This document shows positions 2,683 to 64,000 of a DNA stretch of 64,000 nucleotides, piece after piece. The stretch covers positions 1 through 64,000 of the forward strand of contig JAADVB010000030.1 of assembly GCA_023334545.1 (NCBI GenBank), read 5' to 3'. The DNA is from Salisapilia sapeloensis CBS 127946. Its lineage: Eukaryota > Protista > Oomycota. Numbering within the stretch: position 1 is the stretch's first letter; each line of letters opens with the position of its first letter. A program made the position numbers and the translations under genes. The notes under the pieces were generated by a model. The model was not told the origin of the DNA. It did no database searches and saw only the letters and a program-made list of their open reading frames with translations.

Positions 2683-5163
2683 TTATTCGAAAGGTTGTTG
2701 CCATTGCTGTCTCATGGTCTTTGGATGATAGTAGTAGTGCTCACCTATAAACATCCTTATGCTAAGTAATAGCTTGAGTAGTTTCATAAAGACCTTACCA
2801 AGTGTCGAATCTAGTATAATTATCCAGTCGTCCGAGTACTCCAAGTCTCCTTTTCCGAGTCCGTAAGGCTTCCTCTTGGATGAAGTTTGTGTTGGAGTGT
2901 GAAAGTAAATAGACTCATGATCTGTTGCATCAAACTGTCGTACGTATTCCTGTCGAACCTTTTGCTGAAGCAACTTCCGAGCAGCGAACATGCGATAGAC
3001 AGATTGGATTCGCAGAGCACTCTCTCTTCGCTTTTGCTGCTCCTCAATGTTTTCCTTTATCTGATGGAAATTTTAGTGAGCTAAACATCAACTACGGCAC
3101 GTAAAGAGATTACCATTCGTTTCTCATCCTGCTTTTCCTGGATTTCCATCCATTCTTTTTCCAAAGCTGTCCATTCGTCTTGCGCCTACGTCGGATGAAC
3201 GTCAAGTGTAAGTTGCTCATTAAGATGATTGCAGACAATGTGAAGCTTACCTTTGCATCCACGAGAGCTAGCTCATCATCTATCACCTCCAAACGAGCTC
3301 GTTCTTGAATGTCTTCGCTTTGCAGGTGGACACCAGACTTTCGATAACGCGTCTTTAGTTCCGCTTTACGCTGCTTTAGTTGGCGATAGAGCTGGACAAA
3401 TTGCTGTCGGTATTCGCTAGTTGGTTCCTCTTCCATCGACAAGAGCTGTGAGACAACCGACTTTCGATTCTCCCTTGCTACTGCTGTGCGTGATTCCCAT
3501 TGCTGCTTAAGCTCATCGTACGACTGAGACTTTTGCCTTCGTAACTTTTCTAGACGTTTCTCTTTGGAACGTTGAAAGTATTCCCATTGCCTCTGGCACT
3601 TTGCTCTTAGAGCTTTCTTCTTTTCCAGCTCCTCCAGAGCCTTCTTTTTCTTCTCAGCTTCATACTCTGCTCGTCGCTTCTGGTACCACATACTAACCTC
3701 ATACCGATGACGTTCAGCTTTTAATCTACTAGCCTCTGCATTTCTTTCCATCTCTATCTCAATACGTTTTCGTTCAGCTGCCTCTTGCGCCTCGATCTGG
3801 AGTTTCTTATTTATCCGACATAAACGCATCCATCGCTGTAGTCGTCGAGCCATATCGCCTTCGATCTGTAACCAAAATGCTTGTTTCTCCGCTCTTATTA
3901 TCTTCATCTCTCTGTCATAGTATTCCAACAAGCGCTCCTTGGTCTTCTTTCTACCAAGACGACCACGATACATACGCTACGGAATCTTTCAAATAGTACC
4001 AGACTATCAGGATAAATGTAGCGAGTTACCATACCTGGATAGTGATGGCTCGAAGGTTTTTGCGGCGCATAGTTCTCATGAACGAGATAAAGAACGACCG
4101 GTCTCGAAATGTTCGTTGTACTGAAATTACAGCTCGTAAAGCTTTCCAACGATTATCGGCCTCCATTCTGCCTCTGTATCCTCGGTAAACTCGCTGTATC
4201 TCAACTACGGCAAGACTAGTCATTGTGAAAGCCTTCACAGTCGTAAACGCCCGATGGAGATGAACCCGCGACAAGTTTCTATCAGCTCGCTCCATCTTCA
4301 CTCGGATCTTCTTGCGAAATTTAGCGTTGTCTCGCCATCTTACAAAGCAGAAAGCTTCCAGTCGTTTATTATTCGAGCCCATGAGGCGCATAATCGCTCG
4401 TCGAACATGCGCCTTCTGCCTTTTGGCAACCGCAAACTCTCGATAGACTGGAGCTGCCATCTCTTCTAGCACCAAGGTATGTCGTGCAGCCTTGTGAAGC
4501 AGTGCTGCTAAGGGAGGTCTGGAAAGAAGGTGAAGCAACGTATCATATGTAATACGAGGCTTGGCTAGAAGAGTCTCGGTATCCGCTTTCCGTATCTACA
4601 TGAACTAGCTACGTGACTTGAATTATCATTACAAAAGGTATATACTAGGCTACTCTGTCGCGAATGAACAAGTCGGCAAGTCCAGATCCCGAGAGCAATC
4701 CTAACAATTGGACAGCATCTGAAGAAGCGATCGTCGATTTTTTCGACACCTCCGAGACAGAAGAGGAAGCTAAGACGCAGAAACACCATCGAATGTACTT
4801 TTTCATTCCGTCCAAAGGCTCCTCCAGACTTCTACTCTATCCATGTTGTAAGGACGTTCCTAGTTCATTAGGTCCAAAAGAGGTAGCAACATACCTCAAC
4901 ATGCATAGCAAGAAGCGCCAATGGACCATCAACGTTCCATCTGGACTTCGCTCTAGACAACATTGCAGTCGTTCCAACTGCCGCCAGAGTCTCGACACGT
5001 CCTTCTTATCAGCATCACAACTCGACTTCTCAAAGACTCGTCGACAGACACCAACAAACCGAGCTTTTGACACGACATCCAGTGGAAACGCACGTGCAAA
5101 GTTCTCCAACAAGGCTCGATCATCTCCAGCAAGTCGTACTCGAGCGAAACAAGGTCTCGACAT
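2683..5163 (-). CDS. Multi-exon IQ-motif/coiled-coil protein with WW-like C-terminus
   Basis: ORFs 4837-5169, 4026-4538, 3110-3973 and 2683-2991 can be joined through GT-AG introns. IQ motifs: EIQRVYRGYRGR, SVQRTFRDR, RLQRWMR. The middle is charged coiled coil, and the C-terminus YYYHPKTMRQQWQQP is WW-like. Confidence 0.65.
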
Positions 5164-5488
5164 GGCCACATGCTATTCCCATCTACATTAAGATCTACCA
5201 CTACACTATAAACGTAACTAGTTCTCACAAGACGCATCAATTCTGTCCATTTATCAGTATATCGCTTATCCGGCATCGTCTCTCGCCACTTGCGCCAGTC
5301 CACCTTCCATTCCACATGACCTTCCTCCATCTCGAATTCGTACAAGTCTACCAAAACGACAGTCGCATGAAACGGCAAGTATAAACTTGGCAAAGGCATG
5401 AAACGTGGGGTATATTGGATCCTATGATAAAAAGGGAAGTGGAAAATGTTAAAAATGCACACCCCAAGTCTAGCGCATCGACACACCT

Positions 5489-45734: not shown

Positions 45735-48700
45735 CTACTTTTTCATGTTCATCCTTTTCCGCTCTACCTGCTTCATCAGAGAGATGTTGGCTGTCCTAAG
45801 AGCTCGAGACTTCTTTCGTTCGGCTGTCAGCATCCCTCGGAGACGTTCGACTTCGTTCTCGTCCGTCCAGGCTTCCGTGGTACTCGATTGAGCGTTCCCT
45901 ACGGACGTTGCTTGGTGTGGGATGGCAGGCGGATCCGAGTCGACGCTCGACTGATTCGTCTGCGTCCGTAGAGTTGATACGTAATTCTGCGGACGGCAGC
46001 GATGGACGGGTGCGGACACTGGTCGATTATTTTTGCGTGAATCCGACTCGACGTTCACCGTTCGGCCGTCTACCACGCGATGGTACGTTGCGATCTACTC
46101 TCTCAGCGAGGTTACCAGATGTGGCATCGAATATGATCGAGATAGACGTACCAGTGCTTTTAACTGGCGTAGTTTGTGTCCTTCAGCTAGAAGGTTCTTG
46201 GGTAGCGAGATTATCCTTTTAGCTACGGTTAGTACGCGCTGGTCTGCTAGTAGACGAGTAGAACGATACCTTTCGCCGTTGCAGAGCATCCGATAGAGCT
46301 TGCCAGTAAACTCACACAGCTCCTCACAGTCCGCACGGAGGTGCTGCATGGACGTTGTTATTTGCGCTCGAGTCTCCTTTAGCTTGTCGTCTGCCTGGAC
46401 GAGCTGGTTTGCCTTGAGCTCCAGCATGCTCTCGTACTGCCAACACACCATGCTTGAGCTTTCTACATGGCAACATACTGTATAAAGTTTCTTACGTGCT
46501 GTCGGATGAGAGCTATCTCCTCTTCTTTACTTGCTTCTACCGCCGCAATACGAGTGCGCAGTTGCTACCAACGACGTAGTAGGTCAGACCATGTAGGATT
46601 AGGAGTAAAATTATGATACCTGATCGTGTATATCCTTGGTGCGTATCGACGCTCTAGACTCTTGTGGTCGATTTGAGCTAGTACTGTGGTCACGCTCGAC
46701 TGTACTCTGCTGATTACTGTGGCTCATCAATTGCTGAAGCTCTATCCGGTGCTTTTCACTCTGCGCAGTTAGAGCTCTTTTGTGCTCTCGATCGCGCTGG
46801 TACAGCGTATCCTCTAGCGCTACCAATCGCTTTCGCTGCTCTGCAATCGTCTTCCTCGCTTCCTCTTTATCCTTTCTCGCGTCCGTCTTCCCATCAACAT
46901 AAGCGATTTATGCAGTGTCCATGAAGGAGCTAGGTGGAAACGTACCGAGAGCATGGCGAGGTTCGTCTTCGCGTTGGCGTACTTGAGTCGTAGTTGTTCA
47001 CGGTCTCGTTGGGAAAAGTCTATAAACGCTCAGCACTGGTCACTAGCTCAAGGTCGAGGCAATGGAAAGTAGTACCGATCTTGTGGATGACATTCTGCCC
47101 CATCATCAGCTCCCGGCGACTTCGAACGCCAACGGGACTCGGTCGTCCTTGGTTATCACTACTCCCATCGACGTCTTCAAATACCGATTGGAGAACCATA
47201 CCATCCTACCGTCGCGTCATGGTCTTAATGTCGACCGATGTACATTACCCAACTTCATAGGACTTACTGCGAATTTGATCTCTCCATTTTCCGTTACTTC
47301 CTCTGCTTCGAACCCAAGCTCATTCAGTGCCGAGATAAAGCGCTGGTTGTAATCCTTCCGAAGACTCTCCATCTGCCGCTTCAGATTATTTACTTCCTCT
47401 TGAAGCCGCCGGATACGACGGTCCTTGTCCGTTCCAGACCCACTGATGTAGTTCACGCGAGGCTATCGAATGACCATACATGAGCTATGCGTCTTACTAT
47501 AGGACATAAGGAAGAAGTGCCTGGTTTTGAACCGATCGACAACGGTTGGCGAACTGGAGTGTGCTTAAACACTCCTCATAGTGTTCCTTCATGGGGTGGA
47601 TGGTGGCAATCAGAGTTGTCAAAGAGTTTCCACCTAACGTCCATGTCCATGACTATCCAGTAGCTTTATATCACCCTAGCGAGACGTACCGATGCTGTTC
47701 TGGAGTATTCGTGTAAGCTTTGAGTCTCGATAAGGAATATAGTTGTAGCCACTGCCAGGATCAAGGGACATGATGACTTTGCCCACGGCACTCAGACTGG
47801 AGTTGATGTGCAGCGCTTCCTTCAGTCTCTGACCATCCGACTCGCTCTTCTTTAATCTCTCAGAGCTATACAAAGGTATATCTTCATTCGTTTGTAGTAT
47901 GAGTAGGCAGGTCAAATGACGTACCCTGCTAAGTCCACAAGGTGAAGACTTCCGTAGATGACTTCCTCCGTCTTTCGATCTGCGTCAAGACACTAATCAG
48001 TGCTTTCTCGACTGATTTATACACATACATATTACTTTGCTGGAAGATGTGGACGGTGAAGACAGTGTGGGATCTCGAAGACACGGCATTCATCTTGGTC
48101 TCGTGCGTCGCCCGGAGCTTCAGTCCGGACTGGACGATTGCATCGACATCTTCCCGACAAGTCACGGTAACGAGTGCGAGGTCTTTAACAAAGACACTGC
48201 CTTGAGCATCCTCGTGTATTTCAAAGTTGGCTTTTGAAGTAAAGGTAGACGACATGAGAAGTGTATAACGATATTTCTACAAGACATGGATGGTACAAAC
48301 CTTTTTCATAGTCGTAATCCTCTTCCGATCGTGCTGGGTTCGATCCGAAACTAATCAAGTAGAGATGAAGGAGAACCGGTATCTAGTAGATGTTCTTCAA
48401 TATACCTCGACGTGCTTTCTGTTCGTCGTAATTGCTGCCAATGTAACAAGTTACCATAAATCTTCGATGAGCTAAATGTAAGGAATGTGTTTACCTGTCT
48501 GAGAAACCACTCGGCAGTGCTAGATGTCTGGTGGGAAAACGGTCTTCCAGTCTTCTTCAAATAGCTATTTTATGCTGGTCAATCCTTGTAGCCGCAAAGG
48601 TATGAATAGACGACTACATACGCTCTAGAGAGATCTCGCACGCGATCGCAGTAGATCTCGAGAAAACTGACGACGAATGTCACTTCCTATAAAGTTTGTG

Positions 48701-49464
48701 AGAACATTTCTTCTTAACTACTACTGTGTACGTACGGTCGATCGACTGTCGCCTCGCTTTACCATGTCGAACATGTAGGATATGGAGCGAGGAAGGAGTC
48801 CAGCCTTCTCCCCTGCTTCGCCAAATATACTTTAAGAGCATAGCAAGTGGGTTGTCGATTCGTATTTGTGCAAAGCATTTAGCAAAGGCATACCTGAAAG
48901 TTTTCCCGGATCCCGTTTGTCCATAGGCAAAGCAGCAACTATTGATTCCTTTGAGAGCGTGGTCGACGAGACTCTTACTCGTCTATAGATATGTAATCGC
49001 CTTGTCAGAAGACATCAGTTGGACTTAACGGGAACGCTGTACCAAGTCAAAGAGAGTTGCTTGGCTCGTGTCTGTCCAGCATATCTATAGCATGACTGGT
49101 AAGCTAGCAAGTACGCAGTCGAATCAATGAGGCCGTACGTTGTCGAAGCTAAAGGCATGGTTTCCATACTGCATTCTTTCCGTGTCCTACGCCATCAACA
49201 ATGTTAGATTTCCAGTGCAAACGCCCAATGTATAAGAAGGATACTTTAATGACGATGTTCGTCGGGGACTCCTTGCGACGCTCAAACATATCCTCTGGCG
49301 CTTGCTCACCATTAGCACAGGGTCGGGCTCGGACGTACACCTAGTTAGCGCATTCAAAATGACTATGACCAAATGTCCATTTTATTCTTGCACAAATCAA
49401 ACGATACTTTGACGTTGGCATTGTCTAGCAGACGCGTGTAGTCTGTGGTCACCTTGTGGTCCAT
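45735..49464 (-). CDS. Kinesin with N-terminal motor and coiled-coil tail (many exons)
   Basis: VYVRARP, P-loop [11 protein letters not shown] (about 48895-48930), switch I SSRSH, switch [20 protein letters not shown] and [13 protein letters not shown]. Coiled-coil exons continue to 45735. Confidence 0.85.
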
Positions 49465-49816
49465 CTTGGTGACGCGAGATGATCGAGGCTAAAGTTGGCT
49501 TTTCAACATATGAAACGTCTATACAAACTCTGAATATCAAGCTATCTGTCCTTTAGACCTAGCAGTATGAAAATAGTAACGCAAGGACCAAAGTAGAGGG
49601 GGGATGACATCGACTGCTAGCCTCCGAGCAGCTCACCAACTTCAAAAATAAATTTGTAGATACACCCCTCTCTAACGTTACACTCACATTTGATATTAAA
49701 AAATATGTACAGCATTTGTACAGAATACAGTTCGAGATGTATGTATATCCGACAACAAATAACGAAACAGCATCAGAGACCGAGTCCCCCCTCTTTTGCT
49801 ACCCTCTCATCTACCT

Positions 49817-50237
49817 ATGGCTCCTGCAACGCTCTCCGGTGATCCGCGAAAGCCGGATGCGATCAAGACATTCGTGCGGAAGGAAGTTGACCCGGAGTCA
49901 GAACCGATGGACTATTACTCCTTTGCATCGCTCATACTTGGTCTCGGCAGTTTCATTTTGAAGGTAGGAATCCGTCTCATCTGAAACACAATCTTGCCTT
50001 GGCTGTTCATTAGAAGAAACTAACATGCAGGCGATATCATAGTTGAAAGAATTCGCTTGGTTGTCTCTATTCATGGCCGCAGCCTCGTACGTGAACCTAC
50101 CGGCATCCGAAAAGGAGATGCGATCGATCATCATGTCCGTGACACTCGCGACGATGGCACTCGTGTCGAGCTATACGTACCGGCCTCCCCTTATTCCAGG
50201 CAGCAAAGCAGCAGTAGACGCTACTCCAGATCTCTAG
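49817..50237 (+). CDS. WDR83OS: PAT complex subunit Asterix (2 exons; intron 49964-50042)
   Basis: DPRKPDAI...DYYSFASLILGLGSFILK/LKEFAWLSLF...MSVTLATMALVSSY matches the UPF0139 pattern. Confidence 0.85.
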
Positions 50238-50425
50238 ATCTGTCAGCAGGCTTACCATAGGCTCGACCTATGCTTTTAAACATGGCTTCTCTGTCGTCTT
50301 CTCAAATCATCACGTTGAAATCGTTCTGTTGCTTAGTCTGTAGCTAATTATAGCACAAGTTCTAGGAACAATAACCTCTCTAGGGCTGAGAGAATGCTTC
50401 GCTGCAGATGAAAGCTTGAGACCGG

Positions 50426-53400
50426 ATGAATTTTAACTTGTCTTCGCATGAACGCAGGTCGCCGCCCAGTCCAATGCCACAGCACAATGAAGTCGATACC
50501 AATGACCTGATACAGCACCCAGGACTATCTTCTGGTTCCTATCCATCTCATGATCGTGAGAATACATCAAACCTCAAACGTTTCTCCAAGTCACACAGCA
50601 AACATCCTTCCCCCGTAGTCCCTGTCACACTACCTCCACTAGCAGCACTAGACCAGTATCAACAGCGACAGCTTCGCTCCTTCCTTCGCAATTTTTTATC
50701 AGATGAAAGTGGGACCCTCTGTTCCTCCTTGGATTTGGGCCAGCACGCCATCGACTCTGGCATCGCCGTATCCGACGCTACGGTCCATGAAGTCGTCCAC
50801 ATGCTACCGAAACTACAAAGCCTGTCGCTAGCAACGTGTCTGCAGATCACCGACGCCAGTCTTTGGGCGATCGCGAACAAGTGCCTATGCCTCGAGACGC
50901 TCTCTCTTTCCAAGTGCACTCGATTCTCGGAGCTGGGACTTCGTCTCGTCAGTCATGAGTGCCCTCTCCTGCATCTTGACCTCTCAGACTGTCCTCAGGT
51001 CAATGATAAGATGCTTCAGGCCATTGCTGCTGGCTGCTGGTCCTTGGAAGTGTGTCGTCTCCGGCGTTGCGTCTTGGTTTCCGACGCTGGCCTTGTCCAT
51101 CTCGCCCAATGCTGTCGCCAACTGCTTGAACTAGACGTCGCTGAGTGCTGTCGAATAGGAGAATTCGGTGATAAGGCACTTGGGGAAATCGGACGGAACT
51201 GCTTTCGATTGGAAACGCTTGATCTCTTTGGCTGTCGGCATGTGCGAGACGGAGGTCTTAGATCGGTTGCTCGAGGGTGTACCAAGCTGAAAACACTACG
51301 GCTATCTGGATGCCGTGAAGTCACAGGTAGGGCGATCCGGGAGGTTGCTCGATGCTGCCAGGCCCTGCATGACCTGTCCCTCGCAGGCTGTGCCAAGACC
51401 AGCAATCAAGATTTACGTGTCCTCGCATCAAATTGCAGAGGGCTCACTGTACTGGACATCAGTGGTAGTGATTTCATCAGCTCTCAAGGTGTTAGATGTC
51501 TAGCAGAGGGTTGTTCAGAACTGACTAAGCTGACACTGGATTACTGTACTCGTATCGATGACACTGCTCTTGAACAGTTTCTCGTCGTAAATGAAAACTT
51601 GAAGAGTCAAACGACTAATAAACTGGACGTGGCGACTCGAAAGCTTGAGTATCTTTCGGTGGTGTCGTGTCGACGCATTCGGGAACCAGGAGTCGATGTT
51701 TTGCTACAAGGCTGTCCAAACCTGACTACACTGAACGTTTCGGGATGTGATCGAGTGAGTCGAAGATTCATGCAATTTGTCATATCTCGGCTAGAGGTTG
51801 TCGAATGGGCCTCTACTTTCTTTGGTTTCCAGCCCTTACCTCATGCTGACGAAATAGTACGCCAGAGACGCCGAAAAGAAGTTGAACATCGTGCTGCAGT
51901 CCTGATCCAAGCAGCGATGAGAGGTTGCCTGGCGAGAGGAGGTCTTTGGGAGGCCAAAATGAAGTATGTCCAGACAAAGGTGCTGCCACGAATTCAAGGC
52001 ATGGCGAGAGGATTTCTCGTCCGAAGACGTATTTTTCTTGAGCAGGAAGAGAAGAAGGAGAGAGCTGCTGCACGGCAAATAAGCCAGGCGTATCAAGACT
52101 ATAGACTCCGTGGGATGCTAGCACGGGCGAAACTTCGACGAAGACTTCAAATGCACTTAGACTTGACTGCGACCGAGATTCAGCGAGTATATCGAGGCCA
52201 TCGAGCTCGATGCTTCTATCGTAAGATGCTAGAGGCAAAATTGATTGAGAAGCAAATGGCAGATCGACTTGGTATTCTCGAAGAGCTATGCGCTATCAAA
52301 CTGCAACGAGCCTATCGTGGTCATTGTGGTCGACATCAAGCAGCGCTGGCGAGAACTGCAAAAGAAATGGCAATTCTTCAAGCTCAACGTGAATCTGATG
52401 CTATTGCCTTTGTTCAGCGTGTGTTTCGAGGGCATCGAGGTCGAAAAGAGAAGAGAAGTCGTCTCATGCAGAAATTGTTCGAAGAACGAAAGCAAGCTGG
52501 AGCGTGTGCTCTACAGAGAGTCGTGCGAGGCCACTGGGCTCGACAAAGAGTCCGCTTTCTTCGTCAGCAGGCATTTGAAAGGCGACGCATGGAAGCAGCG
52601 AGTACCATTCAGCGGTATTGGCGAGGATTATGCGAAAAGCACCTGGCATCCTTGCTACGTGGGCTGCTTAAACTGCATGCTCGTGAAGTTGCAGCTGCTT
52701 GTACGATTCAAACAGCATACCGAATGCAGCGGTCAAAGGCACTTGCTGATGCAATTCGTCTTGCCCGGGAAGCGGAGCGTCGACGAAAGCACGGTGCCAT
52801 TCAAATCCAGAGGTTTGTACGAGGGCATATCGCCCGATCAGAAGTGGAAGCTAGACGAGAGTTACAGCGGCTGCACGTTCAAGCGGCACCTTTGTTTGAG
52901 AAAGAAACGAGAATCACAGAGCTGGTCCAGCAACGTAGGAAGCAAGTAGAAGACCTCACAAAGAAATGTGCTGCGAACGAACGTGATGAGCATGATTTAA
53001 CGGACGAGCTTGAGAAGACGATGCAGATCAAGACCAAATATCACGACTCTAGTCGTATATCGGGTACACCACAACGGTACCTCACGCAATATCTCCAGGT
53101 CCAACTCGCCGATCAGCTTCGTGCCAAACGAATGGAGATGGCAATGGACAACAGGTCACTAGAAACTGCTGTTGATGCATTCAACGAGGCAAATAAAAAG
53201 CTGCGTGTGGTACGAAGGCAACTAGAGCCACTAACAGCTGGTGCATTTGAGCATGCCAAGCTAGCCCGTACTCGGCGCTTGCACAATGATATACGATGGC
53301 AGCGATACGGAGCGCTGACTATACAACGTGTCTATCGTGGATATAGACTTCGCGTAGCGCTAGCAGAGAAAGCTGAATACTGGACTGAATCATGGAATGC

Positions 53401-53491
53401 AAGCACACAAAGTATGGAATACCTCAACACATATACCGGAGACTGTAGACACCGCACACCAATTGGATTAAATCTATTTAAGATGAAATGA
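50426..53491 (+). CDS. Cys-containing LRR (FBXL-type) plus multi-IQ, coiled-coil and WW-like protein
   Basis: About 12 repeats of LxxLxLxxCxxI/VxD, about 11 IQ motifs (IQAAMRGCLAR, IQRVYRGHRAR etc.) and C-terminal WTESWNASTQSMEYLNTYTG. Intronless 1021 aa. Confidence 0.9.
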   Translation: MNFNLSSHERRSPPSPMPQHNEVDTNDLIQHPGLSSGSYPSHDRENTSNLKRFSKSHSKHPSPVVPVTLPPLAALDQYQQRQLRSFLRNFLSDESGTLCSSLDLGQHAIDSGIAVSDATVHEVVHMLPKLQSLSLATCLQITDASLWAIANKCLCLETLSLSKCTRFSELGLRLVSHECPLLHLDLSDCPQVNDKMLQAIAAGCWSLEVCRLRRCVLVSDAGLVHLAQCCRQLLELDVAECCRIGEFGDKALGEIGRNCFRLETLDLFGCRHVRDGGLRSVARGCTKLKTLRLSGCREVTGRAIREVARCCQALHDLSLAGCAKTSNQDLRVLASNCRGLTVLDISGSDFISSQGVRCLAEGCSELTKLTLDYCTRIDDTALEQFLVVNENLKSQTTNKLDVATRKLEYLSVVSCRRIREPGVDVLLQGCPNLTTLNVSGCDRVSRRFMQFVISRLEVVEWASTFFGFQPLPHADEIVRQRRRKEVEHRAAVLIQAAMRGCLARGGLWEAKMKYVQTKVLPRIQGMARGFLVRRRIFLEQEEKKERAAARQISQAYQDYRLRGMLARAKLRRRLQMHLDLTATEIQRVYRGHRARCFYRKMLEAKLIEKQMADRLGILEELCAIKLQRAYRGHCGRHQAALARTAKEMAILQAQRESDAIAFVQRVFRGHRGRKEKRSRLMQKLFEERKQAGACALQRVVRGHWARQRVRFLRQQAFERRRMEAASTIQRYWRGLCEKHLASLLRGLLKLHAREVAAACTIQTAYRMQRSKALADAIRLAREAERRRKHGAIQIQRFVRGHIARSEVEARRELQRLHVQAAPLFEKETRITELVQQRRKQVEDLTKKCAANERDEHDLTDELEKTMQIKTKYHDSSRISGTPQRYLTQYLQVQLADQLRAKRMEMAMDNRSLETAVDAFNEANKKLRVVRRQLEPLTAGAFEHAKLARTRRLHNDIRWQRYGALTIQRVYRGYRLRVALAEKAEYWTESWNASTQSMEYLNTYTGDCRHRTPIGLNLFKMK

Positions 53492-53619
53492 ATATACCTC
53501 TCTACTAATCCGTTTTGCATTACGCTGGCGTGTACTACGACAACAACAAGTAACACTTAAGATGATTCTAATTCGTCGACCAACTTGACGATGTGCGTCC
53601 TAGTAATACAAAACCACAA

Positions 53620-56500
53620 ACAAAGATAACCTGACACTTGACACTAATACAATATCTAGAGAAAATATCACTGACTAAATTAAAAACCAACAAAAATATG
53701 ACAAAGGCTCTAATATGGCCTGTATATTAAAATAATGGAATTATACATTTGAACAAATTAAGCGATTCACATGTAAATACTTTATTTTCAAGTACGAATA
53801 AAGATTTAAAATAAGATAGTTAAACATAAAAACAGAGTGTAAAATGTACTCTATGTAATTAAACCAACAATAACAAGTACATACGAGTATCAAAACGCAC
53901 AAATGCAACTTTAAAACAATAAAATACTCTAAATTTAAAACAAACGATTTAGACGTTTCAATCGTACAAGTGATATAAATTACATGCAAATCTTTTATAT
54001 TAATCTCAATTTTAAATTTCATCAAACCATACAGTAAAGACAACAGAAAAAACCTTTTTGCAGGTATAAACATACAACCAAAAATATAAAAAAATAAGTT
54101 TGTGTTTTTAAAACTTAATAAATGCTAGACCTTATTTCGGAAGAAAAGTTGTATAAGATTAAATATTTATCTATATGAAAAACACAATCATTATGAACAC
54201 ATACATAACTTTAACAAACAGATAAAAAGTCGCTTTCTGACAATCAAATATGATTTAAACCAAATTTATACCGCGCTTAAAATTGCAAATGTATAGTAAA
54301 AAATGTATGTACAGTGTTAAATATAAATATATTAATATTTTGATCGAAAAGTTAGAAAACGTTTTTGGCAGTTGTTGCTGTTAAATTGTAGCACCTAATT
54401 TTTTTTGTAAAATAATAAAATTTGTATAAAACGTATAAAAAGCTTATTCATATAGCTATTAATAATAGAGCTTTTTGTACGAAACTGTGTAAAATACTTT
54501 GTAAGTATACGTCATGTTGACCAAATCAATACAATATTCTGTAGCCTAAGACATGTACCCTCTAAAATTTATGTAAATATACCTGTATAACAAAATTTCT
54601 TTCTAATTTATACAACATCATTTTACTACTACACATACCAATCATTAAACAAACCATATGTATAAAAATAAAAACATCTGAACAGGGTAATGATATAAAT
54701 GTTTTGTAATTATGCTTGAGAGTAATTGGTTTGTGATATTTCATTTTAAACATATTAAAAAAATGTTAAACATGGCAAAAAGCGCTACTTCATCTACTAC
54801 GATCCTTATCTTTTAGCTTTATTTATCTTATTTTTAAACCATAACAAATCATCTCTAAAATAGTTTATTTGGTGCCTTGCAAATTCATAAGCGCTAAAAA
54901 GAAATTAAGATCAATTATAAGAATATACACAATAAGTTGGCATTAAGACACCTCAAAATATTTTGTAATTAAAACAATTTTAACACGCTTTGTTTATAAC
55001 AAAATATATGTATACGTTTATTGTTCCATAACAGTTAAATGGTAGGGTTATAAAGAATTTTTAAAATACTTTGTACATTTTAATTAATCGTTTATTATAC
55101 TCGAGTAGACCCTTAGATAATTGCTGAAATAATCAACCTTATAATACAATATTATAATGGGGTTTTAACTATAATCATAAAATTTTTTTTGTTAAAATAA
55201 AAAACAAATCACTAATAAGCTAAATAAATTTAATACGAAGCGTTCATATATATTTGACTTATTACAAGATTTTTACATTAATATTAATACAAAACAACTA
55301 ATAAACGAGTTTTGTTTGCATTTAGTTCTATACGATTTGAAAGCTTTGAAAAAACGACTTATTAATTTAAATAAAACCAATTTACAAACGACACATTTAA
55401 TTAAACATACATGGTCATTGTGAAAATATAAAAATGAAATTACAGAAAGTCTTTCAATGTAGAATGGTTTTTGTTTTATTTACCGTATACTTTTTTTGAT
55501 ATGTTGGCTTATTTATACTAAACTTATCTTTGTTTAGATATTAAATTAAACTTAAACATGATATAATATAAAGTGCAACGTCTTTTTTGGTGTACTAATG
55601 CTTTTACTTTTTCATTTTGGTTAGCTAAAAACTACAGGCACACATTGTATTTATACAATTTTCTTGCATTTAAAATGAAACACTTTGTAACATTTTTTTT
55701 ATGTTCTTTAAATACAGTAAATTTCGTATATACTTGTTTCTAAATATTTATGATTTTTAATAAAGTCCTTTAAATTAATGCAATTGATTTTATATAATAA
55801 TACTTCTAGAGCTTTGCTTGTATGTAATACATCATGTTATGTACATGTCACATTTTATGTTGTCATAAATATTCCACATTTTAATTTATTTCTTATTTAG
55901 CAAAATTTGAATTGTTTATCTTCTATGTCTCTTACTGTTTAACCTATTAATTCCTTTTATAAGTTTTATATGTTTTATTATTATGTTTGTTTATGTAATG
56001 TTAAAAGATTGGCAATATCATACGAAATATATATGGTGTATTATTTTAGCAAAGTTGCCTCTTTAAACACAAAATTTTTACTTTTTAAATAAAGTTTAAG
56101 ATCTATTATGTGAAATCTAACATTAGTTTACGACACTTAATTTTTACTTTACGAACTTTTATTTTAGTAACATAAACACTATATGTCCGTTGTACAGACT
56201 GAAACCATTTATAATATGCGATACCTGAAAGTATCGGCAATATTAACTAGCGCTTGCATTTTAAAATATTTATAGATTCTTTTACTTATGTTTGTTCGCA
56301 TATTTTTATTTGTATATTTCATATTTTATTTGACTCTTACTTCAATGTTTATTTGAGTATCATAGCGTTTGTTAATACAACATTGTGAACTTGGTTTTAT
56401 GAATTTGAAGACTTTGTATGCAAATAATGACAATTGGAGAAAAAAGTTTGTATTTGATTCATCATAATTAGTAGAGATTTGGTGTTATTATGTGTGTTTG
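53620..56500. other. Gene-free AT-rich island with strand-skew inversion
   Basis: Hand counts: 53881-53940 has A32 T14 C10 G4 (23% GC); 56281-56340 has A12 T36 C7 G5 (20% GC). Flanking genes are near 50% GC. No credible ORF. Confidence 0.9.
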
Positions 56501-57927
56501 AATCTCTGTTATAGATGCATTTCATAGAGCAAGTTATGCAAAAAGAGATTTTAAGTGTCTATATTGACGCTAGAAATCGTCTTGTGCTCGTCTTCATCAA
56601 GTCTTTAAACAACGTCTACGATGTTGAGTTAAAACGATTGAAATGCATTTTATTTATGGTAGAACGACAAATAGAAGCGCCTATACAACATATTTAATCA
56701 GGTCTAAAAGCATTCACGTCTTAAGTGTAAAGCATTTTGGATGCTCTAGCTGTCGTAGAAGATTAAAAGGCAAACAAATAAAGGTGGTTGTTGATTGAGG
56801 AACTATCTGTTGCTAAAATGATAAGGACGGCTCAGTGCATTGATGAAGCTAAATGCCGGTATGAGCTGATTAGGTAGTGAAAGCAGTAGACTCAATTTGC
56901 TTTGCGTGCGGATCGCATCCGGTTTTCCGGCTTTGCATACTTTTGCGCACAGGTTTTGCTTCTGTTTGACACTAATTTTAGCAAAGAATATGGTCTATAA
57001 TAGACAAGTACGTCACTATTATCACTTTAAATGAGCAGACGCATTTGAGTAGTTTGGTACTTTAGCTTTGAATGCACTCATACGTGGCGTCGAATCTTGC
57101 TTTGAGCTGGAGCGTTACGTTGTCGAATTTGAATCGTGCAATTTGTATTTATCGCTCCCGAAGAAAATATTTTCGGGCTTGAAGAGCCTAACTAATGCCG
57201 CTTGCTTTCGTATATTCTTCGTGGAAACTGCTCTTGCTTAACATAATGCAGTCAAACCTGTGAAATGCCTAGGCGTGTGCTGATGCAGCATATAAATAAG
57301 GTATTTAGTTTTGTAAGAAAATGTTTATGCTGGATTATTTATCTACTTAAAAGCGTAGCTATCGAGCATCCAACGCGCGCCATTCTCTATCATAGGCCAT
57401 AGTAGAAGTTAGCAGCATTGACGATATTATAACTATATCTTTTTCTACATTTACTGCTGCTATGCATAAAAGTATAGTTATACACACAGTATTCGCACCA
57501 CGAAGTCAGTATGCTTCATCTCTAGTAAAAATCTACATTGAACCACTAAGCACGTTACCTGTAATAGCAACCCTCCAAATTTGGATAAGGTGTCGCGCAA
57601 AGCTTTTGAGTTTGCTCATCCGCTATTTGGGCAGAAATGATGCTTGAAGACGCGTTCGATGATTACGGAGATAGACATTTCGTTTTGAACCTGATGCTAA
57701 ATGATCCGTTATGTGCACTCTCGTATAAAAGTCATGATCTAAACCAATACTGCTCTCGACCAGTATCGTCGAGTAGGTATGCGCCAGTATTAACTATCAG
57801 TGTAAAGATGTTAAAACGAGTTTAATGGTACTACACTTGTTAGAATGTTGGTACTTATACGGAGATAATTGCAGAGTCACCTTTGCCAACACTTACTTCA
57901 ACAAAATTTACCACGAAACTATTTATC

Positions 57928-60900
57928 CTATATGTGACGGTGCCATATGCGTACTATTATAGCGAAAAGAACCCAAATCAGGACCCAAATCTTGTATACT
58001 ATCCCATTTGCGAATAACACACTAACATCGAAAAGATCAAACGTGTACCCCACTACAAAATATTTGCAAAACGACTCTGGGCAAAAGAGTATACCGTGTA
58101 TGCTGTCTCGAGCCTCGAAATTGAACGTTGTACTCGTTATCTGTGCTGTTATCATCCAAGCAGAAGGAAATTAAAGAGCTTCAAATTGGTAAAATTGAAA
58201 ACATTGATCGAACCTTCAATTGACAATATACACGCATTTCAAAATATTCTTTCTTGCCGACCAAATCATGCGCAGCTCGTGCTGCCTGACAAAGCTTAGC
58301 AATGTCATCAACACAGCATCGAGTAGTAAAGGCTGATTCTGTATTTTGCAGGCCGTCTTGCTTGAGAAGCCACACGATGATATCCACACACACCCTACAC
58401 GAGGCAAACATTATCACAGACCACACGGTATTTTCCACGCTTCTGACAAATGGTCTTCGCACATTCGATAATTCCTACTATCATTAATGCTGAAATAATC
58501 CAGGAAGATCAAAATTGCCCAGTCAACAAAGTTGTTAATGTGGCCTGCAGCTACATGCACAGCGTAATTGAATGGGTGCGCTCGATAGTCATTTTTAGAA
58601 AACTTTGACACATCCACAAAGTAGGCTTTATCCTCACTGCAGCTGACTCGAAGCTTTCACTGCCGTTATCATCGACTTCAGTGATGGCTAGATTTCTGTC
58701 CATCTGCTCCTTCTGAATCATCTTGACATCTTGCATACGGAGTGGATTTTTGTTGGTGATGCTCTTGTTGTGATTTCTACTCGTCTGATTGCTGTCTGAT
58801 AAGATTTTAACCATTTCTGGGAAATCGTCCTGACTTAGACTGTCATCTTTAGGACGTGTGTGATCCTCGATGTCAGGCTGCTCATTGTCTGTCTATTTTA
58901 AAGACAAGTGCAATATATTACTAGAGAGATCATTCTCGTCCGCACCATCTCTAGTAGGGTCGTTCTCACTTTCAATGTCTAATTCAGCAGCTGCTTCTTA
59001 CAGCTTTGCCACAAAGTCATCCGGGGGACGACAGCCCTTTCAAGAATGCGCTGCACTCTCTCCTTGGCTACATACTTTTTAACGACGTCATCGGAAAAAT
59101 CTGCAATCGCATTCAGTACAAGGCCCGGGTCGTTAGATAGCAAAACTGATTCAATAATGTCTTGTATGAGAAAACCTCCAAATAACGCGAGCGCCGAACA
59201 CGTCAGCGAGATGGCCATCTCAATCTTCTCTTTTTTTAGCAACCTGTACCTCTATCTTGGGAAACTATCATAAGTTTGTTGAAGTTGCTTTGAAGTATCT
59301 GCAGACCGTTTTGTTTTGCAATGAGGCGCATTGATTTCGAGTTATTTACGATATAGTATCTGCAGACTCTTTTCATTCGCTGTCGTACGCTCTTTAAGCC
59401 TTTGAATGGAGGCTTTGATACATCCCGTCCAATCTGAATTTTCCATATTTTGATCCCTTTTATATAATAAGCATCCATCTGCATGTTTGAAATAAAATCT
59501 CGCTCGCACATTTCCGAAATGATCGTCAGACACAGATTACGATCGTGGTTTTCGTACGCGAATCGTCGCGGAAGCGACATAATTCAGCCGTTTTGAATAT
59601 ATGGCTTTATTGCCTCAAGCTCGAGCCGACCAAGAGCTAGTTTCATAATGAGACTGTCATCATTCATGCAAATCGAGTAGAACAGTTTCGATTGGAACAA
59701 CTTCGTTCAATATGTTTGGGTTGTGTCATGGGTTTCAATTAGTTTCTGAGCACACTCTACGTACTGAAACGCCATGGTCTTCATAATTTTGCCTCGGAAC
59801 TTTTCCTTGAGGGACTTGTTTTCGACTGCTTCCGAAACAAATTAATGGTAGTTACAACTTTCGTACGGATCTATTCCATAGCGTATCAACCGTTGCAGCG
59901 CATCCAGGTTTTTGAACTTCACAGCTTGTTGCAGTAACGCCGCTTCGTTTAAATGCTTTGCTGTTTTAATCCAGAAGTCGTCGCCGATCCATTTGATGAT
60001 AGAACCCCTCTTATCAGTATCTTCCGTCGTGAATGCCAAGTACAGCACTTCGACTTGATGACCTTTTAAGACGCTAGAAACTTGACGCTTCCATTGGAAG
60101 TCCATGAGTCCATCTCTAGCTTTTGTGACCTCTTTAGACCGAGTGGTCATATCATTCACTGAGTTTTCAAAGAGTGTCTGGCGCAAGAAACCTTGCAGAG
60201 TCTCACGCTTTTCACTCTTGAGCGCTTTGTCAAGACTTGTGAACGGTTCCTCGGGGGGCGACAAACTTTTCGAAATTGTGAAGCTTCAGGCACGTTCCTT
60301 TGCAGTTTCACCATAGCTGTTCTTCGCATTCGGATTTGATCCCCATTCGGTCATGAGTTTTATAACCCCTACATTTTCTTCCAAGACAGCATGATGAAGT
60401 GGGATCTCACTAGTTCCACCGTTCCTATTTACCTCTCCTTCATGTTCTACCAACAACTTTGCCACAGCTAGTTGCTCCTTCTCTGCAGCACGATGAAGCG
60501 GAATGTCACCATCGTCTTCCACCACATTTACATCCGCCCCATGCTCTAGTAGTAACTTGGCAATTTCAGGAAACTTCTTGAGAGAGCAACATGTAACGGC
60601 GTGTTCTCATACTTGATCTTTGCATGCACGTCCGCTTCATGCTGTAAGAAAAGTTTCGCCATCTCCTTGCTTCCGAACTTAGTAGCAACATGGAGTGGTA
60701 TCCCATCGAATTTTCTGAATGCATTCACGTCTGCACCGTGTTCCAAAAGCAACTGCGCAACCTGTTTTTGTCTTCACCTGGCAACGTAATGAAGAGCGGT
60801 CGAATCCAAATAATCTACCTCCCGTATTTCTGCTCCGTACTGCAAGAGAAATTCGATTACTTTGACATGACCTCCTTCCGCTGCCTTATCAAAGGGCGGC

Positions 60901-62068: not shown

Positions 62069-64000
62069 CTACTCGTCGTGTTCCGTCTTTTGCTCCGAGA
62101 CTAGTTTGCGCCGTCCTCTCTTTCGACGTGTGGCTGCGTCCTGTGTCATTTCAAAGTCAATCTCCTGCGAGTCCATCCGCACTGCGTCCCACGTGTACAT
62201 GAAGATCGACCAGACTTGATCGAGCGCACAAGTCTTTACGTCCAAAGTGATGCGAGGCAGCTCCAGTCGCTGCGTGGCATCTGCAAGCACCGTAGGTTGG
62301 CTAGCTTCCTTCTGCGGTCTGTACGTCTGACAGCGCTCGTTTTCGACGAGGTAGACAGACTTAAGGAAGACTTTAAGACCTAGCAGCATGCCGATCGGAA
62401 GCGCATGGAGACTTTGGAGGCGAGTCGAGTCACGAAGGTTGGGGGCTGTCGAGGCATAGTCGTCGATATCGACGTCCGATAGATCCGGCTCTCTCTCCTG
62501 CATGAGCTCCGGTGCGATGCCAAGGTCTGCGAATTCTTGCTTGAGCGTCTCGAGTAGGTTTCTATCAGATGCAAGAGTAAGGATTCTGGATCCGGAGGTA
62601 AGAGAAGAGGTACGTACGATGCATGTAGCGTGACGAATCGGTTGATGTGATAAATAAGGAAGAGCGGCTCATCTTCTAGAGCATAAGGGAGGGATGAGAG
62701 CAGGTGCGTCAGGTAGGAGAGGTAGTCTAGTCTCTTGACCGCGTCCTCCGTTGTCGACGGCATTTGCTTGATGGCGAATTGGTTCAGGACTGCCTTGAGG
62801 AACAAATTGCGTTGGGAGCGAGGCGTCCGGAGACAGTTGGAGTAGAGTTGACCAAAGACGCTTCCTCTGCTTGGGTCTTCATCGACAAAGGGAGAGACGA
62901 GAGCAAAGGCTTGCGACTGGAAGGTAAAGGAGCGACGTATGCCGTCCACCGCCGCGGTTGCCAGGAGCTTGGGGAACTTGGCGTGCAGCGTACCTAGCTG
63001 GTCCTGCGCCAGCTCTCGATTGGCAACGACCTTGTCGGAGGCAAGCGCCACGAGTGTCGGGATGCATTCAAAAGGTCCGACGAGTCCTTGTGTCAGGAGT
63101 TTCGAGAGACAGCCAGCAGCCTCCGACCGGACGTGTGTAGATGGGTGGAGTGCGAGAGACAGAATGTTGTGTAGCTGCGCCTGCATGACGCTCCCGACGA
63201 GAGACGCGTCTCCATCCCGATCTCCTGCCACTTGCTCTCGAGCGTTTCGAGCGAGTCTCTTGGGACTAGATGCGTCCGCCAGTCGTTCCTCTTCGACTTG
63301 CAGGAGGTTCTGGATGCTCGTGAGACACTGCGTCGCGACGTCCTCCGACCCACTGCGCAGGAGCATTTCTAGTATACGATCTTCATGCGCCTCCAGCAAG
63401 AGTCTCGGTCGAGCGATGAAGAGGAAGCTGAGGCCTTGGACGGCTTTCGTAGTCCACCGGGGCGACGGACTGGACACGAGGTAGGCTGTGTAGACCTTGT
63501 AGAGCGACTGAGTAATGTTGCCAGGCTCGAGGTCGCTCCTGTCTGGCTCTAGGCCTGAGTGTTCGTCTAGGTCGATTGCCGAGACGAACTGACTGGCGCA
63601 GAAGAGCGCTCTTTGGACGGACGCATCGATGCTTGGCGTCATACTGATGGGAGTATCCGATGGCTCAAAGTTCTGGAGGCAGGCGTAGAAGACGTCGAGC
63701 ATGCTGAAGAGGAGTGTGGGGGAAGTATTCGTCTTCTTTGGGAGCAGAGCGAGGCACTTGATGGCAGGTCCGACGACGCTCGGAGGTGCTTTGAAGACCA
63801 GGTCCTTCATGTCTGTCTCCAACTTGGTGACGATCCTCGGTGGAATGCGCGTCATGTCGTCGAGTACTTGCTCGAGCATGGAGATGACGACGCTCTGGAC
63901 TTTGGCTTCATTCGCTTTGGACAGGTTGTCATCTCCTCCGACGTACACCATGAGCACTCGAACGTGCTTCACCAAGAGACTCGGATTCGCCTCGCTAAAG
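62069..64000 (-). CDS. NIPBL: Cohesin loader NIPBL/Scc2, C-terminal part (runs off window; intron 62562-62617)
   Basis: SLVGSVMQAQLHNILSLAL, LLTQGLVGPFECIPTLVALASD, YLTHLLSSLPYALEDEPLFLIYHI and LLGLKVFLKSVY match the Nipped-B C-terminal domain. Confidence 0.92.

What the first reader, a model, noticed from the sequence alone, without database searches (positions are those of the whole stretch)
53620..56500. 3-kb AT-rich, gene-free island: candidate short regional centromere
Seen: GC falls abruptly from about 50% to about 20-25% right after the LRR-IQ stop codon. There are no genes or tandem repeats, in a genome where intergenic gaps are otherwise tens to hundreds of bp. Established: diatom (Phaeodactylum) centromeres are short, low-GC, non-repetitive regions, whereas described Phytophthora centromeres are large and retrotransposon-rich. 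Inference: a diatom-like compact centromere in an oomycete-like genome would be a new centromere type for the group.
Basis: partly seen in the sequence, partly recalled or inferred. Interest (0 to 1): 0.75.

Follow-up and report, generated by a model that had tools for sequence, protein, structure and literature searches.

The report
Short AT-rich candidate centromere, oomycete
A unique, gene-free 3-kb stretch of very AT-rich DNA in a compact water-mould (oomycete) genome belongs to a small, discrete class of look-alike islands. It is most likely a small centromere of the diatom or yeast kind, unlike the huge transposon-filled centromeres known from other oomycetes, but no kinetochore data exist to prove it.

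Summary
Window 53,601-56,565 (2,965 bp) has 23.8% GC against about 49% around it. It starts 110 bp after the LRR-IQ stop codon and has no ORF, RNA gene or repeat, and no copy elsewhere in the 22.4-Mb assembly.

I sampled 20 other loci that carry long A/T runs. Three hold the same object:
- 2.5-3.1 kb long at 23-26% GC;
- unrelated in sequence;
- TpC depleted (odds ratio 0.7 against 1.2 elsewhere);
- the same strand-skew switch, A,C-rich on the left and T,G-rich on the right.

A 1.46-kb all-AT contig also shares the composition and TpC depletion. Weaker GC dips lack these marks, so the class is discrete. Extrapolation gives about 10-20 islands.

The skew polarity is that of a fixed replication origin, as at the small centromeres of Candida albicans and Yarrowia. 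The intact-gene-free zone runs to about 62 kb and includes a decayed ankyrin-family pseudogene. The LRR-IQ gene lacks the WW tail of its orthologues, and synteny with Pythium ends at the island.

The best reading is a small regional centromere (about 0.5). Collapsed Copia contigs leave a transposon-type centromere possible.

The scan had already reported this island class on other contigs of this genome.

The parts
46700..49500 (-). Kinesin gene with short introns (left flank). Its linkage to the LRR-IQ gene is shared with Pythium oligandrum.
   Evidence: tblastn of ORFs from the Pythium locus L023 and the Logan locus L024 hits 46,713-49,482 in collinear exon-like pieces at 55-97% identity.
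50426..53491 (+). LRR-IQ gene, 1,021-aa ORF, whose 3' end abuts the island. It lacks the roughly 450-aa C-terminal tail with several WW motifs that oomycete orthologues carry.
   Evidence: Pfam IQ, LRR_4 and LRR_6. Orthologues are 1,350-1,590 aa with a WW domain and 48-52% identical. The alignment to the Pythium ORF ends at its residue 1,020 of 1,490. An HMM built from the orthologue tails finds nothing right of the island.
53601..56565 (.). AT-rich island core: 2,965 bp at 23.8% GC, single copy, with no gene and no repeat. This is the candidate centromere core.
   Evidence: composition. (no features). (the only other match in the genome is 225 nt at 70% identity, in a weak trough on C978). 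(TpC odds ratio 0.71).
53601..54300 (.). A-rich and C-rich arm of the island (on the + strand).
   Evidence: AT skew is +0.20 to +0.26 and GC skew -0.09 to -0.25 in 300-bp bins. Ordinary 3' flanks in the window have a mean sense-strand AT skew of -0.03.
54301..55450 (.). Central part with almost no A/T skew. The cumulative A-T curve peaks at 55,448, which is the skew switch.
   Evidence: The switch statistic has z = 8.8 against 1,000 shuffles.
55451..56400 (.). T-rich arm of the island (on the + strand). G>C appears from about 56,400.
   Evidence: AT skew is -0.16 to -0.21. GC skew reaches +0.22 at 56,400-56,999.
56566..57927 (.). Transition zone with GC rising from 31% to 41%. It holds only short open frames and no recognisable coding or RNA.
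   Evidence: no Pfam match above noise, no Rfam match.
58181..60525 (-). Decayed member of a large ankyrin-repeat gene family, broken into open frames of 147 aa or less.
   Evidence: Pfam Ank with E = 2e-10 at 60,286-60,525. DNA matches of 65-71% identity occur on about ten other contigs. The 140-aa piece has 45 matches in the genome. Intact paralogues sit in open frames of 500-1,549 aa, whereas the frame here is 147 aa.
62380..63975 (-). C-terminal part of a Nipped-B/Scc2-type cohesin-loader gene. It is the first intact gene to the right, and its 3' end faces the island.
   Evidence: Pfam Nipped-B_C with E = 8e-38.

Best explanation
The island is one member of a small, discrete class of roughly 2.5-3.1-kb AT-rich, gene-free segments that are unique in sequence, in a compact oomycete genome. 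Most likely it is the core of a small regional centromere: a stretch on which CENP-A nucleosomes and the kinetochore assemble. Such a core would be specified by base composition and chromatin state rather than by a sequence motif, as in diatoms, Plasmodium, Cyanidioschyzon and several yeasts.

The A,C-rich to T,G-rich switch inside it is the footprint expected if a replication origin has fired at the same place in most cell cycles for a long time. That is the pattern reported at the small centromeres of Candida albicans and Yarrowia lipolytica.

Shown here:
- the composition, uniqueness and size class;
- the shared dinucleotide and skew signatures;
- the rarity of the islands;
- the dead gene beside this one.

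Inferred, not shown: kinetochore binding, origin firing, and one island per chromosome.
For: 1. Discrete class. Of 20 loci fetched because they hold an A/T run of 22 or more, three contain islands of 2,485, 3,064 and 2,655 bp at 23-26% GC. One 1,459-bp contig is all island-like. The other 16 never fall below 32% GC in 500 bp.
2. Shared signatures. The islands share no sequence, but all share TpC depletion (0.69-0.71, against 1.26 in genic and 1.16 in non-island DNA) and GpC excess. All share the same strand-symmetric skew polarity, with z = 4.9-8.8. Weaker troughs of 30-35% GC lack both marks.
3. Rarity. About 111 such A/T runs lie on at least 74 contigs, and 15-20% of the sampled loci are islands. 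That gives roughly 10-20 islands in 22.4 Mb, within the range of oomycete chromosome numbers (12-18 in PMC11139960 and PMC12887029). Each of the four island contigs has only one long A/T run. C590 spans at least 110 kb, inferred from the window offset given.
4. Skew polarity. GC skew runs - to + and AT skew + to -, which is the origin polarity described for small regional centromeres (PMC2924309). Ordinary 3' flanks do not explain it.
5. Not neutral decay. The neighbouring pseudogene has 41-46% GC and a normal TpC ratio of 1.09.
6. ORF-free setting. The AT core lies in a 6-9-kb zone free of intact ORFs at all four loci, as with C. albicans CEN cores.
7. No transposons. There is no transposon or repeat in or beside it, and the whole assembly shows only 3 Copia RT and 10 integrase matches.
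8. Breakpoint. Synteny with Pythium ends exactly at the island and the adjoining gene is truncated.
Against: - There are no CENP-A, Hi-C or replication data.
- 'One per chromosome' is untested. The assembly has 1,365 contigs, and no TTTAGGG or TTAGGG arrays were found for counting chromosome ends.
- Contigs C889 (three long A/T runs, at 35, 48 and 69 kb) and C1255 (two) could hold several islands. I could not read them.
- All known oomycete centromeres, including Pythium and Globisporangium, are marked by Copia-like transposons (PMC7082073, PMC11139960). An intact Copia polyprotein ORF exists on contig C881, and LTR elements sit on what are probably short collapsed contigs. Large repeat-rich centromeres may therefore simply be unassembled.
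- My count rests on 3-4 of 20 sampled loci, with a 95% interval of about 3-33 islands.
Confidence: 0.5

Rival explanations
1. The islands are constitutive replication origins, or another special chromatin domain such as a boundary or attachment site, without kinetochore function. The true centromeres lie in unassembled Copia-like transposon arrays, as in other oomycetes.
For: The skew polarity is that of an origin. CoLT-type centromeres are the rule in every oomycete studied (PMC7082073, PMC11139960). LTR elements, including an intact Copia ORF, sit on short contigs of their own, which is typical of collapsed repeats.
Against: About 10-20 sites in 22.4 Mb are far too few to be the genome's set of origins, so the islands would have to be a special class. 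In yeasts with the same signature that special class is the centromere (PMC2924309). Only 3 RT and 10 integrase matches were seen in the assembly.
Confidence: 0.18
2. The island is ordinary or foreign DNA (a dead gene, transposon or insert) eroded by a local C-to-T mutation process acting on cytosines that follow a pyrimidine. It has no present function.
For: TpC and CpC are depleted about 1.6-1.8-fold relative to other DNA. The adjoining LRR-IQ gene has lost its 3' part and an ankyrin gene next door is dead. The GC content rises gradually to the right of the island.
Against: - There is no residual similarity between islands or to anything else in the genome. C-to-T erosion of copies of one element would leave similarity behind.
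- The sizes are narrow (2.5-3.1 kb) and the skew switch is identical at unrelated loci.
- TpC depletion is equal on both strands and in both halves, so it does not produce the skew.
- The RIP signature is absent: CpA is enriched at 1.2 and TpA is not.
- The dead gene beside the island has not drifted below 41% GC.
Confidence: 0.12
3. It is an artefact: a chimeric join, a contaminant, or a mitochondrial DNA insertion.
For: AT-rich DNA is prone to assembly trouble, and oomycete mitochondrial DNA is similarly AT-rich (my own knowledge).
Against: The island is embedded between oomycete genes on one contig. Three further contigs carry the same structure. There is no tRNA, rRNA, ORF or organelle-like match. 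There is no other copy in the assembly.
Confidence: 0.03

Closest known systems
Diatom (Phaeodactylum tricornutum) centromeres; also the 2-4-kb AT-rich centromeres of Plasmodium and the 2-3-kb ones of Cyanidioschyzon merolae
   Same: They are short (2-5 kb), non-repetitive and unrelated in sequence, and are defined by low GC with at least 500 bp below 33% (bioRxiv 10.1101/096016). Diatoms belong to the same stramenopile supergroup as oomycetes.
   Different: The trough here is much deeper and sharper: 24% GC over 3 kb, visible at any window size. Diatom ChIP peaks average 39% GC and show no dip at 0.5-10 kb windows. Here there is also a skew switch and a TpC depletion, which I did not find mentioned for diatoms in the passages of that paper that I searched. 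CENP-A binding and episome maintenance are shown for diatoms and untested here.
Small regional centromeres with a built-in early origin (Candida albicans, C. dubliniensis, Yarrowia lipolytica)
   Same: They have a unique core of about 3-4.5 kb in a longer ORF-free region and no shared sequence. GC skew switches from - to + and AT skew from + to - at the core. Yarrowia combines an AT skew with a local GC dip (PMC2924309).
   Different: C. albicans cores are not strongly AT-rich. Origin firing, ORC binding and CENP-A are demonstrated there and untested here. The lineage is unrelated (fungi).
Oomycete centromeres of the Phytophthora sojae type
   Same: They are in the same group of organisms and are gene-poor and silent.
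   Different: The island is 3 kb, unique and free of transposons.

Membership tests
Short AT-rich non-repetitive regional centromere (diatom / Plasmodium / C. merolae type) | CENP-A (CenH3) nucleosomes occupy the region | not testable with these tools
   No ChIP data. Sequence alone cannot show this.
Short AT-rich non-repetitive regional centromere (diatom / Plasmodium / C. merolae type) | A region of 2-5 kb containing at least 500 bp below 33% GC, which is the strongest low-GC peak of its neighbourhood | tested here: met
   2,965 bp at 23.8% GC. It scores 51 of 59 on the metric used for diatom centromeres, against 0-1 in windows elsewhere in the 64 kb away from the island and its shoulder.
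Short AT-rich non-repetitive regional centromere (diatom / Plasmodium / C. merolae type) | Non-repetitive, with no sequence or motif shared between centromeres | tested here: met
   No repeats. No similarity among four islands. No k-mer stands out after multiple testing, and the TTGACA cluster reported for another island is not general.
Short AT-rich non-repetitive regional centromere (diatom / Plasmodium / C. merolae type) | Exactly one per chromosome | tested here: inconclusive
   The estimate is about 10-20 islands in 22.4 Mb, with one per island-bearing contig. However, the assembly is fragmented, no telomeres were found, and C889 and C1255 are unresolved.
Short AT-rich non-repetitive regional centromere (diatom / Plasmodium / C. 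merolae type) | Confers stable maintenance on a plasmid | not testable with these tools
   This is a bench assay.
Small regional centromere with constitutive origin (C. albicans / Y. lipolytica type) | Skew switch at the core, with GC skew going from - to + and AT skew from + to - | tested here: met
   The polarity is the same in all four islands, and z = 8.8 here. The polarity definition is from PMC2924309.
Small regional centromere with constitutive origin (C. albicans / Y. lipolytica type) | Replicates earliest in S phase, with ORC bound at the switch | not testable with these tools
   No replication-timing or ORC data.
Oomycete Copia-like-transposon (CoLT) centromere (P. sojae type) | Hundreds of kb with clustered Copia-like transposons | tested here: not met
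   A 3-kb unique core in an 8.5-kb zone, with no reverse transcriptase, integrase or repeat. Only 3 RVT_2 matches occur in the whole assembly, none on this contig.
RIP-type mutated repeat | Derived from repeated DNA, with residual similarity among copies and a CpA-to-TpA bias | tested here: not met
   Single copy. No similarity between islands. The CpA odds ratio is 1.2 (enriched) and TpA is 0.9.
Organelle DNA insertion (NUMT) | Similarity to mitochondrial genes, rRNA or tRNA | tested here: not met
   No tRNA, no Rfam match, no ORF with a Pfam match, and no match to any other contig of the assembly beyond 225 nt at 70%.

The most novel reading that the evidence does not exclude
One oomycete lineage uses roughly 3-kb AT-rich, sequence-unique centromeres with a built-in constitutive replication origin, in place of the 200-350-kb Copia-rich centromeres of Phytophthora, Pythium and Peronospora. 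These centromeres are shaped by a local, pyrimidine-context C-to-T mutation bias. This would mean a switch of centromere type within the oomycetes. It would also supply a small, clonable centromere for stable episomes in a group that has none.
Probability: 0.45. Interest if true: 0.8.

Novelty: new variant of a known kind. Interest (0 to 1): 0.6.

Why it matters
Centromere architecture is thought to be uniform in oomycetes: long and rich in Copia-like transposons. That uniformity is used to predict centromeres and to reconstruct karyotype evolution in the group.

A lineage with 3-kb AT-rich centromeres would show that centromere type can flip within the oomycetes, and would link them to their stramenopile relatives, the diatoms. 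It would also give a tractable case of the centromere-origin coupling so far documented mainly in yeasts. On the practical side, a 3-kb centromere is a candidate maintenance element for oomycete plasmids.

All of this rests on a ChIP or Hi-C experiment that has not been done. Until then it is a well-supported candidate.

Tried and rejected
- **Whole-assembly census.** I mapped all A/T runs of 22 or more with anchored patterns and fetched the first 20 loci. I did not try to obtain the rest by other routes. The other 54 contigs, including C889, C1255 and the rest of C590, were therefore not read.
- **Chromosome count from telomeres.** No TTTAGGG x3, TTTAGGG x4 or TTAGGG x4 arrays occur in the assembly, so no estimate was possible.
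- **Island as a giant intron of the LRR-IQ-WW gene.** Rejected. An HMM of the orthologues' WW tails finds nothing beyond the island. A first attempt with a global alignment was misleading.
- **Shared motif.** The k-mer enrichment is unremarkable. The TTGACA cluster noted by an earlier agent is not general, with 1, 1, 5, 1 and 2 copies. An earlier version of the script timed out.
- **Strand-coordinated TpC deamination as the cause of the skew.** Rejected. The depletion is equal on both strands and in both halves.
- **Ordinary 3'-flank composition as the cause of the skew.** Rejected.
- **Coding relics at 56.5-57.9 kb and the 110-aa ORF in the island.** No Pfam match above noise.
- **Organism identity.** It is an oomycete about 50% identical to Pythium, Phytophthora and Lagenidium and about 41% identical to Saprolegniales in one protein. 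I could not name the genus, and literature searches did not help. No close relative was available for checking whether the island's position is conserved.
- **Diner et al. 2017** was not held under its PMC id, so I used the bioRxiv version.
Full report
**Observation**

The window as a whole has 48.7% GC, and no 1-kb bin outside 53-57 kb falls below 0.40. In 200-bp windows GC drops from 0.40-0.51 to 0.27 at 53,600 and stays at 0.20-0.28 until about 56,450. A likelihood-ratio segmentation puts the island at 53,601-56,565: 2,965 bp at 23.8% GC.

The 1,021-aa ORF on the left (50,426-53,491, + strand) carries IQ and LRR domains, and its stop codon lies 110 bp before the island. Inside the island I found:
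- no tandem repeat of note;
- no real direct or inverted repeat;
- no tRNA and no Rfam match at E<=1;
- no open frame longer than shuffles give.

By the metric used for diatom centromeres, the island scores 51 of 59 low-GC 100-bp windows. Windows elsewhere in the 64 kb, away from the island and its right shoulder, score 0-1.

**Surroundings**

To the right, GC climbs slowly: 0.37 at 56.5 kb, 0.41 at 58 kb and 0.46 at 60 kb. No intact gene appears before a Nipped-B-type gene at 62,380-63,975 on the minus strand.

The stretch 58.2-60.5 kb holds a string of short minus-strand frames. One is an ankyrin repeat (Pfam Ank, E = 2e-10). The DNA matches about ten other contigs at 65-71% identity. The 140-aa piece has 45 matches in the genome. 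Intact paralogues sit in open frames of 500-1,549 aa, whereas the frame here is 147 aa. This is a dead member of a large ankyrin family.

The zone without an intact gene is therefore about 8.5 kb long, with the AT core at its left edge. The stretch 56.6-57.9 kb gave no Pfam or Rfam match.

**Organism and synteny**

The window is G000:C590:1-64000, in an assembly of 22.4 Mb and 1,365 contigs. The LRR-IQ protein is 48-52% identical to orthologues in Pythium, Globisporangium, Lagenidium and Phytophthora, and 40-44% identical to those in Saprolegniales. The organism is thus an oomycete outside the well-sampled genera.

Those orthologues are 1,350-1,590 aa long and end in a tail of about 450 aa with several WW motifs. 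Here the ORF stops after one degenerate WW-like motif, and a profile of the orthologue tails finds nothing beyond the island. The gene is truncated at the island border, and the island is not an intron.

In Pythium oligandrum and in a Logan assembly, aldehyde dehydrogenase genes follow the LRR-IQ gene directly, with no AT island. The kinesin to the left of the LRR-IQ gene is linked to it in Pythium as well. Synteny with Pythium therefore ends exactly at the island.

**Is it one of a class?**

A/T runs of 22 or more occur about 111 times, on at least 74 contigs. I fetched the first 20 of these loci in contig order.

| Locus | Contig | Length (bp) | GC |
|---|---|---|---|
| window | C590 | 2,965 | 23.8% |
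| L008 | C269 | 2,485 | 24.7% |
| L010 | C358 | 3,064 | 23.1% |
| L022 | C515 | 2,655 | 25.6% |
| L006 | C159 (whole contig) | 1,459 | 21.9% |

C159 has no ORF or RNA gene, so it is probably an island fragment. The other 16 sampled loci never fall below 32% GC in any 500-bp window.

The islands share no sequence and no over-represented word. They do share three signatures:
- **Size and GC**, as in the table.
- **Dinucleotide bias.** The TpC odds ratio is 0.69-0.71 in all five segments, against 1.26 in genic DNA, 1.16 in non-island loci and 1.09 in the neighbouring shoulder. GpC is 1.3-1.7.
- **Skew.** A>T and C>G on the left, T>A and G>C on the right (z = 4.9-8.8 against shuffles for the four islands, 3.4 for the C159 fragment). 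This pattern reads the same after reverse complementing, so its polarity is a real shared property and not an effect of contig orientation.

Weaker troughs of 30-35% GC and 1 kb or less (on C978, C487, C313 and C100) show neither the TpC depletion nor the switch. The class is discrete.

Three or four islands in 20 sampled loci, out of about 74-80 loci, gives roughly 11-16 further islands, with a 95% interval of about 3-33. Earlier agents of this scan, working on other contigs, reported 15-21. That figure is a lead, not evidence, but my independent sample is compatible with it.

**What the skew means**

The left 0.7 kb of the island is A,C-rich (AT skew +0.20 to +0.26). The central 1.15 kb is almost unskewed. 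The right 0.95 kb is T-rich (-0.16 to -0.21), with G>C from 56.4 kb.

Ordinary 3' flanks in this window have no such bias (mean -0.03), so read-through or UTR composition does not explain it.

The polarity (GC skew - to +, AT skew + to -) is that of a replication origin with a G,T-rich leading strand. It is the pattern described at the small regional centromeres of C. albicans, C. dubliniensis and Y. lipolytica. The authors take it as the footprint of an origin that fires constitutively over evolutionary time, and Yarrowia combines an AT skew with a local GC dip (PMC2924309).

The TpC depletion is equal on both strands and in both halves. It is therefore a separate, strand-symmetric context bias and does not cause the skew.

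**Why not neutral decay, RIP, a NUMT or an artefact**

- **Neutral decay.** The dead ankyrin gene next door, presumably unconstrained, still has 41-46% GC and a normal TpC ratio. The island's 24% GC needs a local process or selection.
- **RIP-like erosion of one repeat family.** This would leave copies similar to one another, and there is no similarity. The CpA-to-TpA signature is also absent.
- **Organelle DNA.** Nothing resembles it.
- **Artefact.** The island lies between oomycete genes on one contig, and the same structure recurs on three other contigs.

**Comparison with known centromeres**

The P. sojae centromeres that have been described are long and rich in Copia-like transposons. The same marker is used for Globisporangium, Pythium and Peronospora (PMC7082073; PMC11139960). 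The island fails that description.

It fits the short, AT-rich, non-repetitive type known from diatoms, Plasmodium and C. merolae (bioRxiv 10.1101/096016). It also fits the origin-coupled small regional type of yeasts. I found no paper that describes such centromeres in an oomycete.

**Caveats**

The assembly has only 3 Copia RT and 10 integrase matches. These sit a few kb into contigs of their own, and one (on C881) is an intact 1,726-aa polyprotein frame. That is how collapsed repeats look in a short-read assembly, so unassembled transposon-rich centromeres cannot be excluded.

No telomere arrays were found, so the chromosome number is unknown. C889 and C1255 carry several long A/T runs and were not read.

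**Verdict**

The finding is a real and well-defined object and a good centromere candidate (about 0.5). The main rival is an origin or chromatin domain without kinetochore function. It is a further member of a class that this scan has already reported on other contigs of the same genome.

What this report adds:
- an independent sample-based confirmation that the class is discrete;
- the truncated flanking gene and the synteny break;
- the dead ankyrin gene as an internal neutral control;
- the negative test of the TTGACA motif;
- the finding that TpC depletion is strand-symmetric.

Noticed in passing
window 50426-53491: The LRR-IQ gene lacks the roughly 450-aa C-terminal tail with several WW motifs that all oomycete orthologues carry. 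It ends after one degenerate WW-like motif, right at the island border.
   Followed up: partly
window 58181-60525; L010 8598-9559: A decayed member of a large ankyrin-repeat family (at least 45 matches in the genome, with intact copies in 500-1,549-aa frames) lies beside the island. The shoulder of a second island (C358) has weak, collinear matches to the same family, with E about 3-5e-5. This may be an enrichment of the family near islands, or it may be chance.
   Followed up: partly
G000:C881:1772-4543: An apparently intact Copia-type polyprotein, with integrase and RVT_2 in one 1,726-aa open frame. It is one of only three Copia RT matches in the assembly. Its copy number is unknown, which bears on whether transposon-type centromeres exist unassembled.
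   Followed up: no
G000:C889 (35.3, 47.9, 69.1 kb) and G000:C1255 (112.6, 150.5 kb): These contigs have two or three well-separated A/T runs of 22 or more. If more than one of them were a full island, the centromere reading would be in trouble. I could not read them.
   Followed up: no
G000:C952:119-5173: More than ten long A/T runs lie within 5 kb, and the same 23-mer occurs in opposite orientation at 119-141 and 5151-5173. This could be a very AT-rich short contig bounded by an inverted repeat, or possibly mitochondrial DNA.
   Followed up: no
whole assembly G000: There are no TTTAGGG (x3, x4) or TTAGGG (x4) arrays anywhere. Either the telomeres are unassembled or this oomycete uses another repeat.
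   Followed up: partly
L011 2-810, L016 5390-5776, L017 5041-5127: A short dispersed repeat is shared by three unrelated contigs (C411, C456, C461): 75% identity over 391 nt and 97% over 87 nt. It lies near non-island A/T runs.
   Followed up: no
window 46700-53491 versus L023 (Pythium oligandrum) and L024: The kinesin and LRR-IQ genes are neighbours here and lie within 10 kb of each other in Pythium oligandrum. The genes that follow LRR-IQ there (two aldehyde dehydrogenases and a cytochrome-P450-reductase-like gene) are absent from this window.
   Followed up: partly
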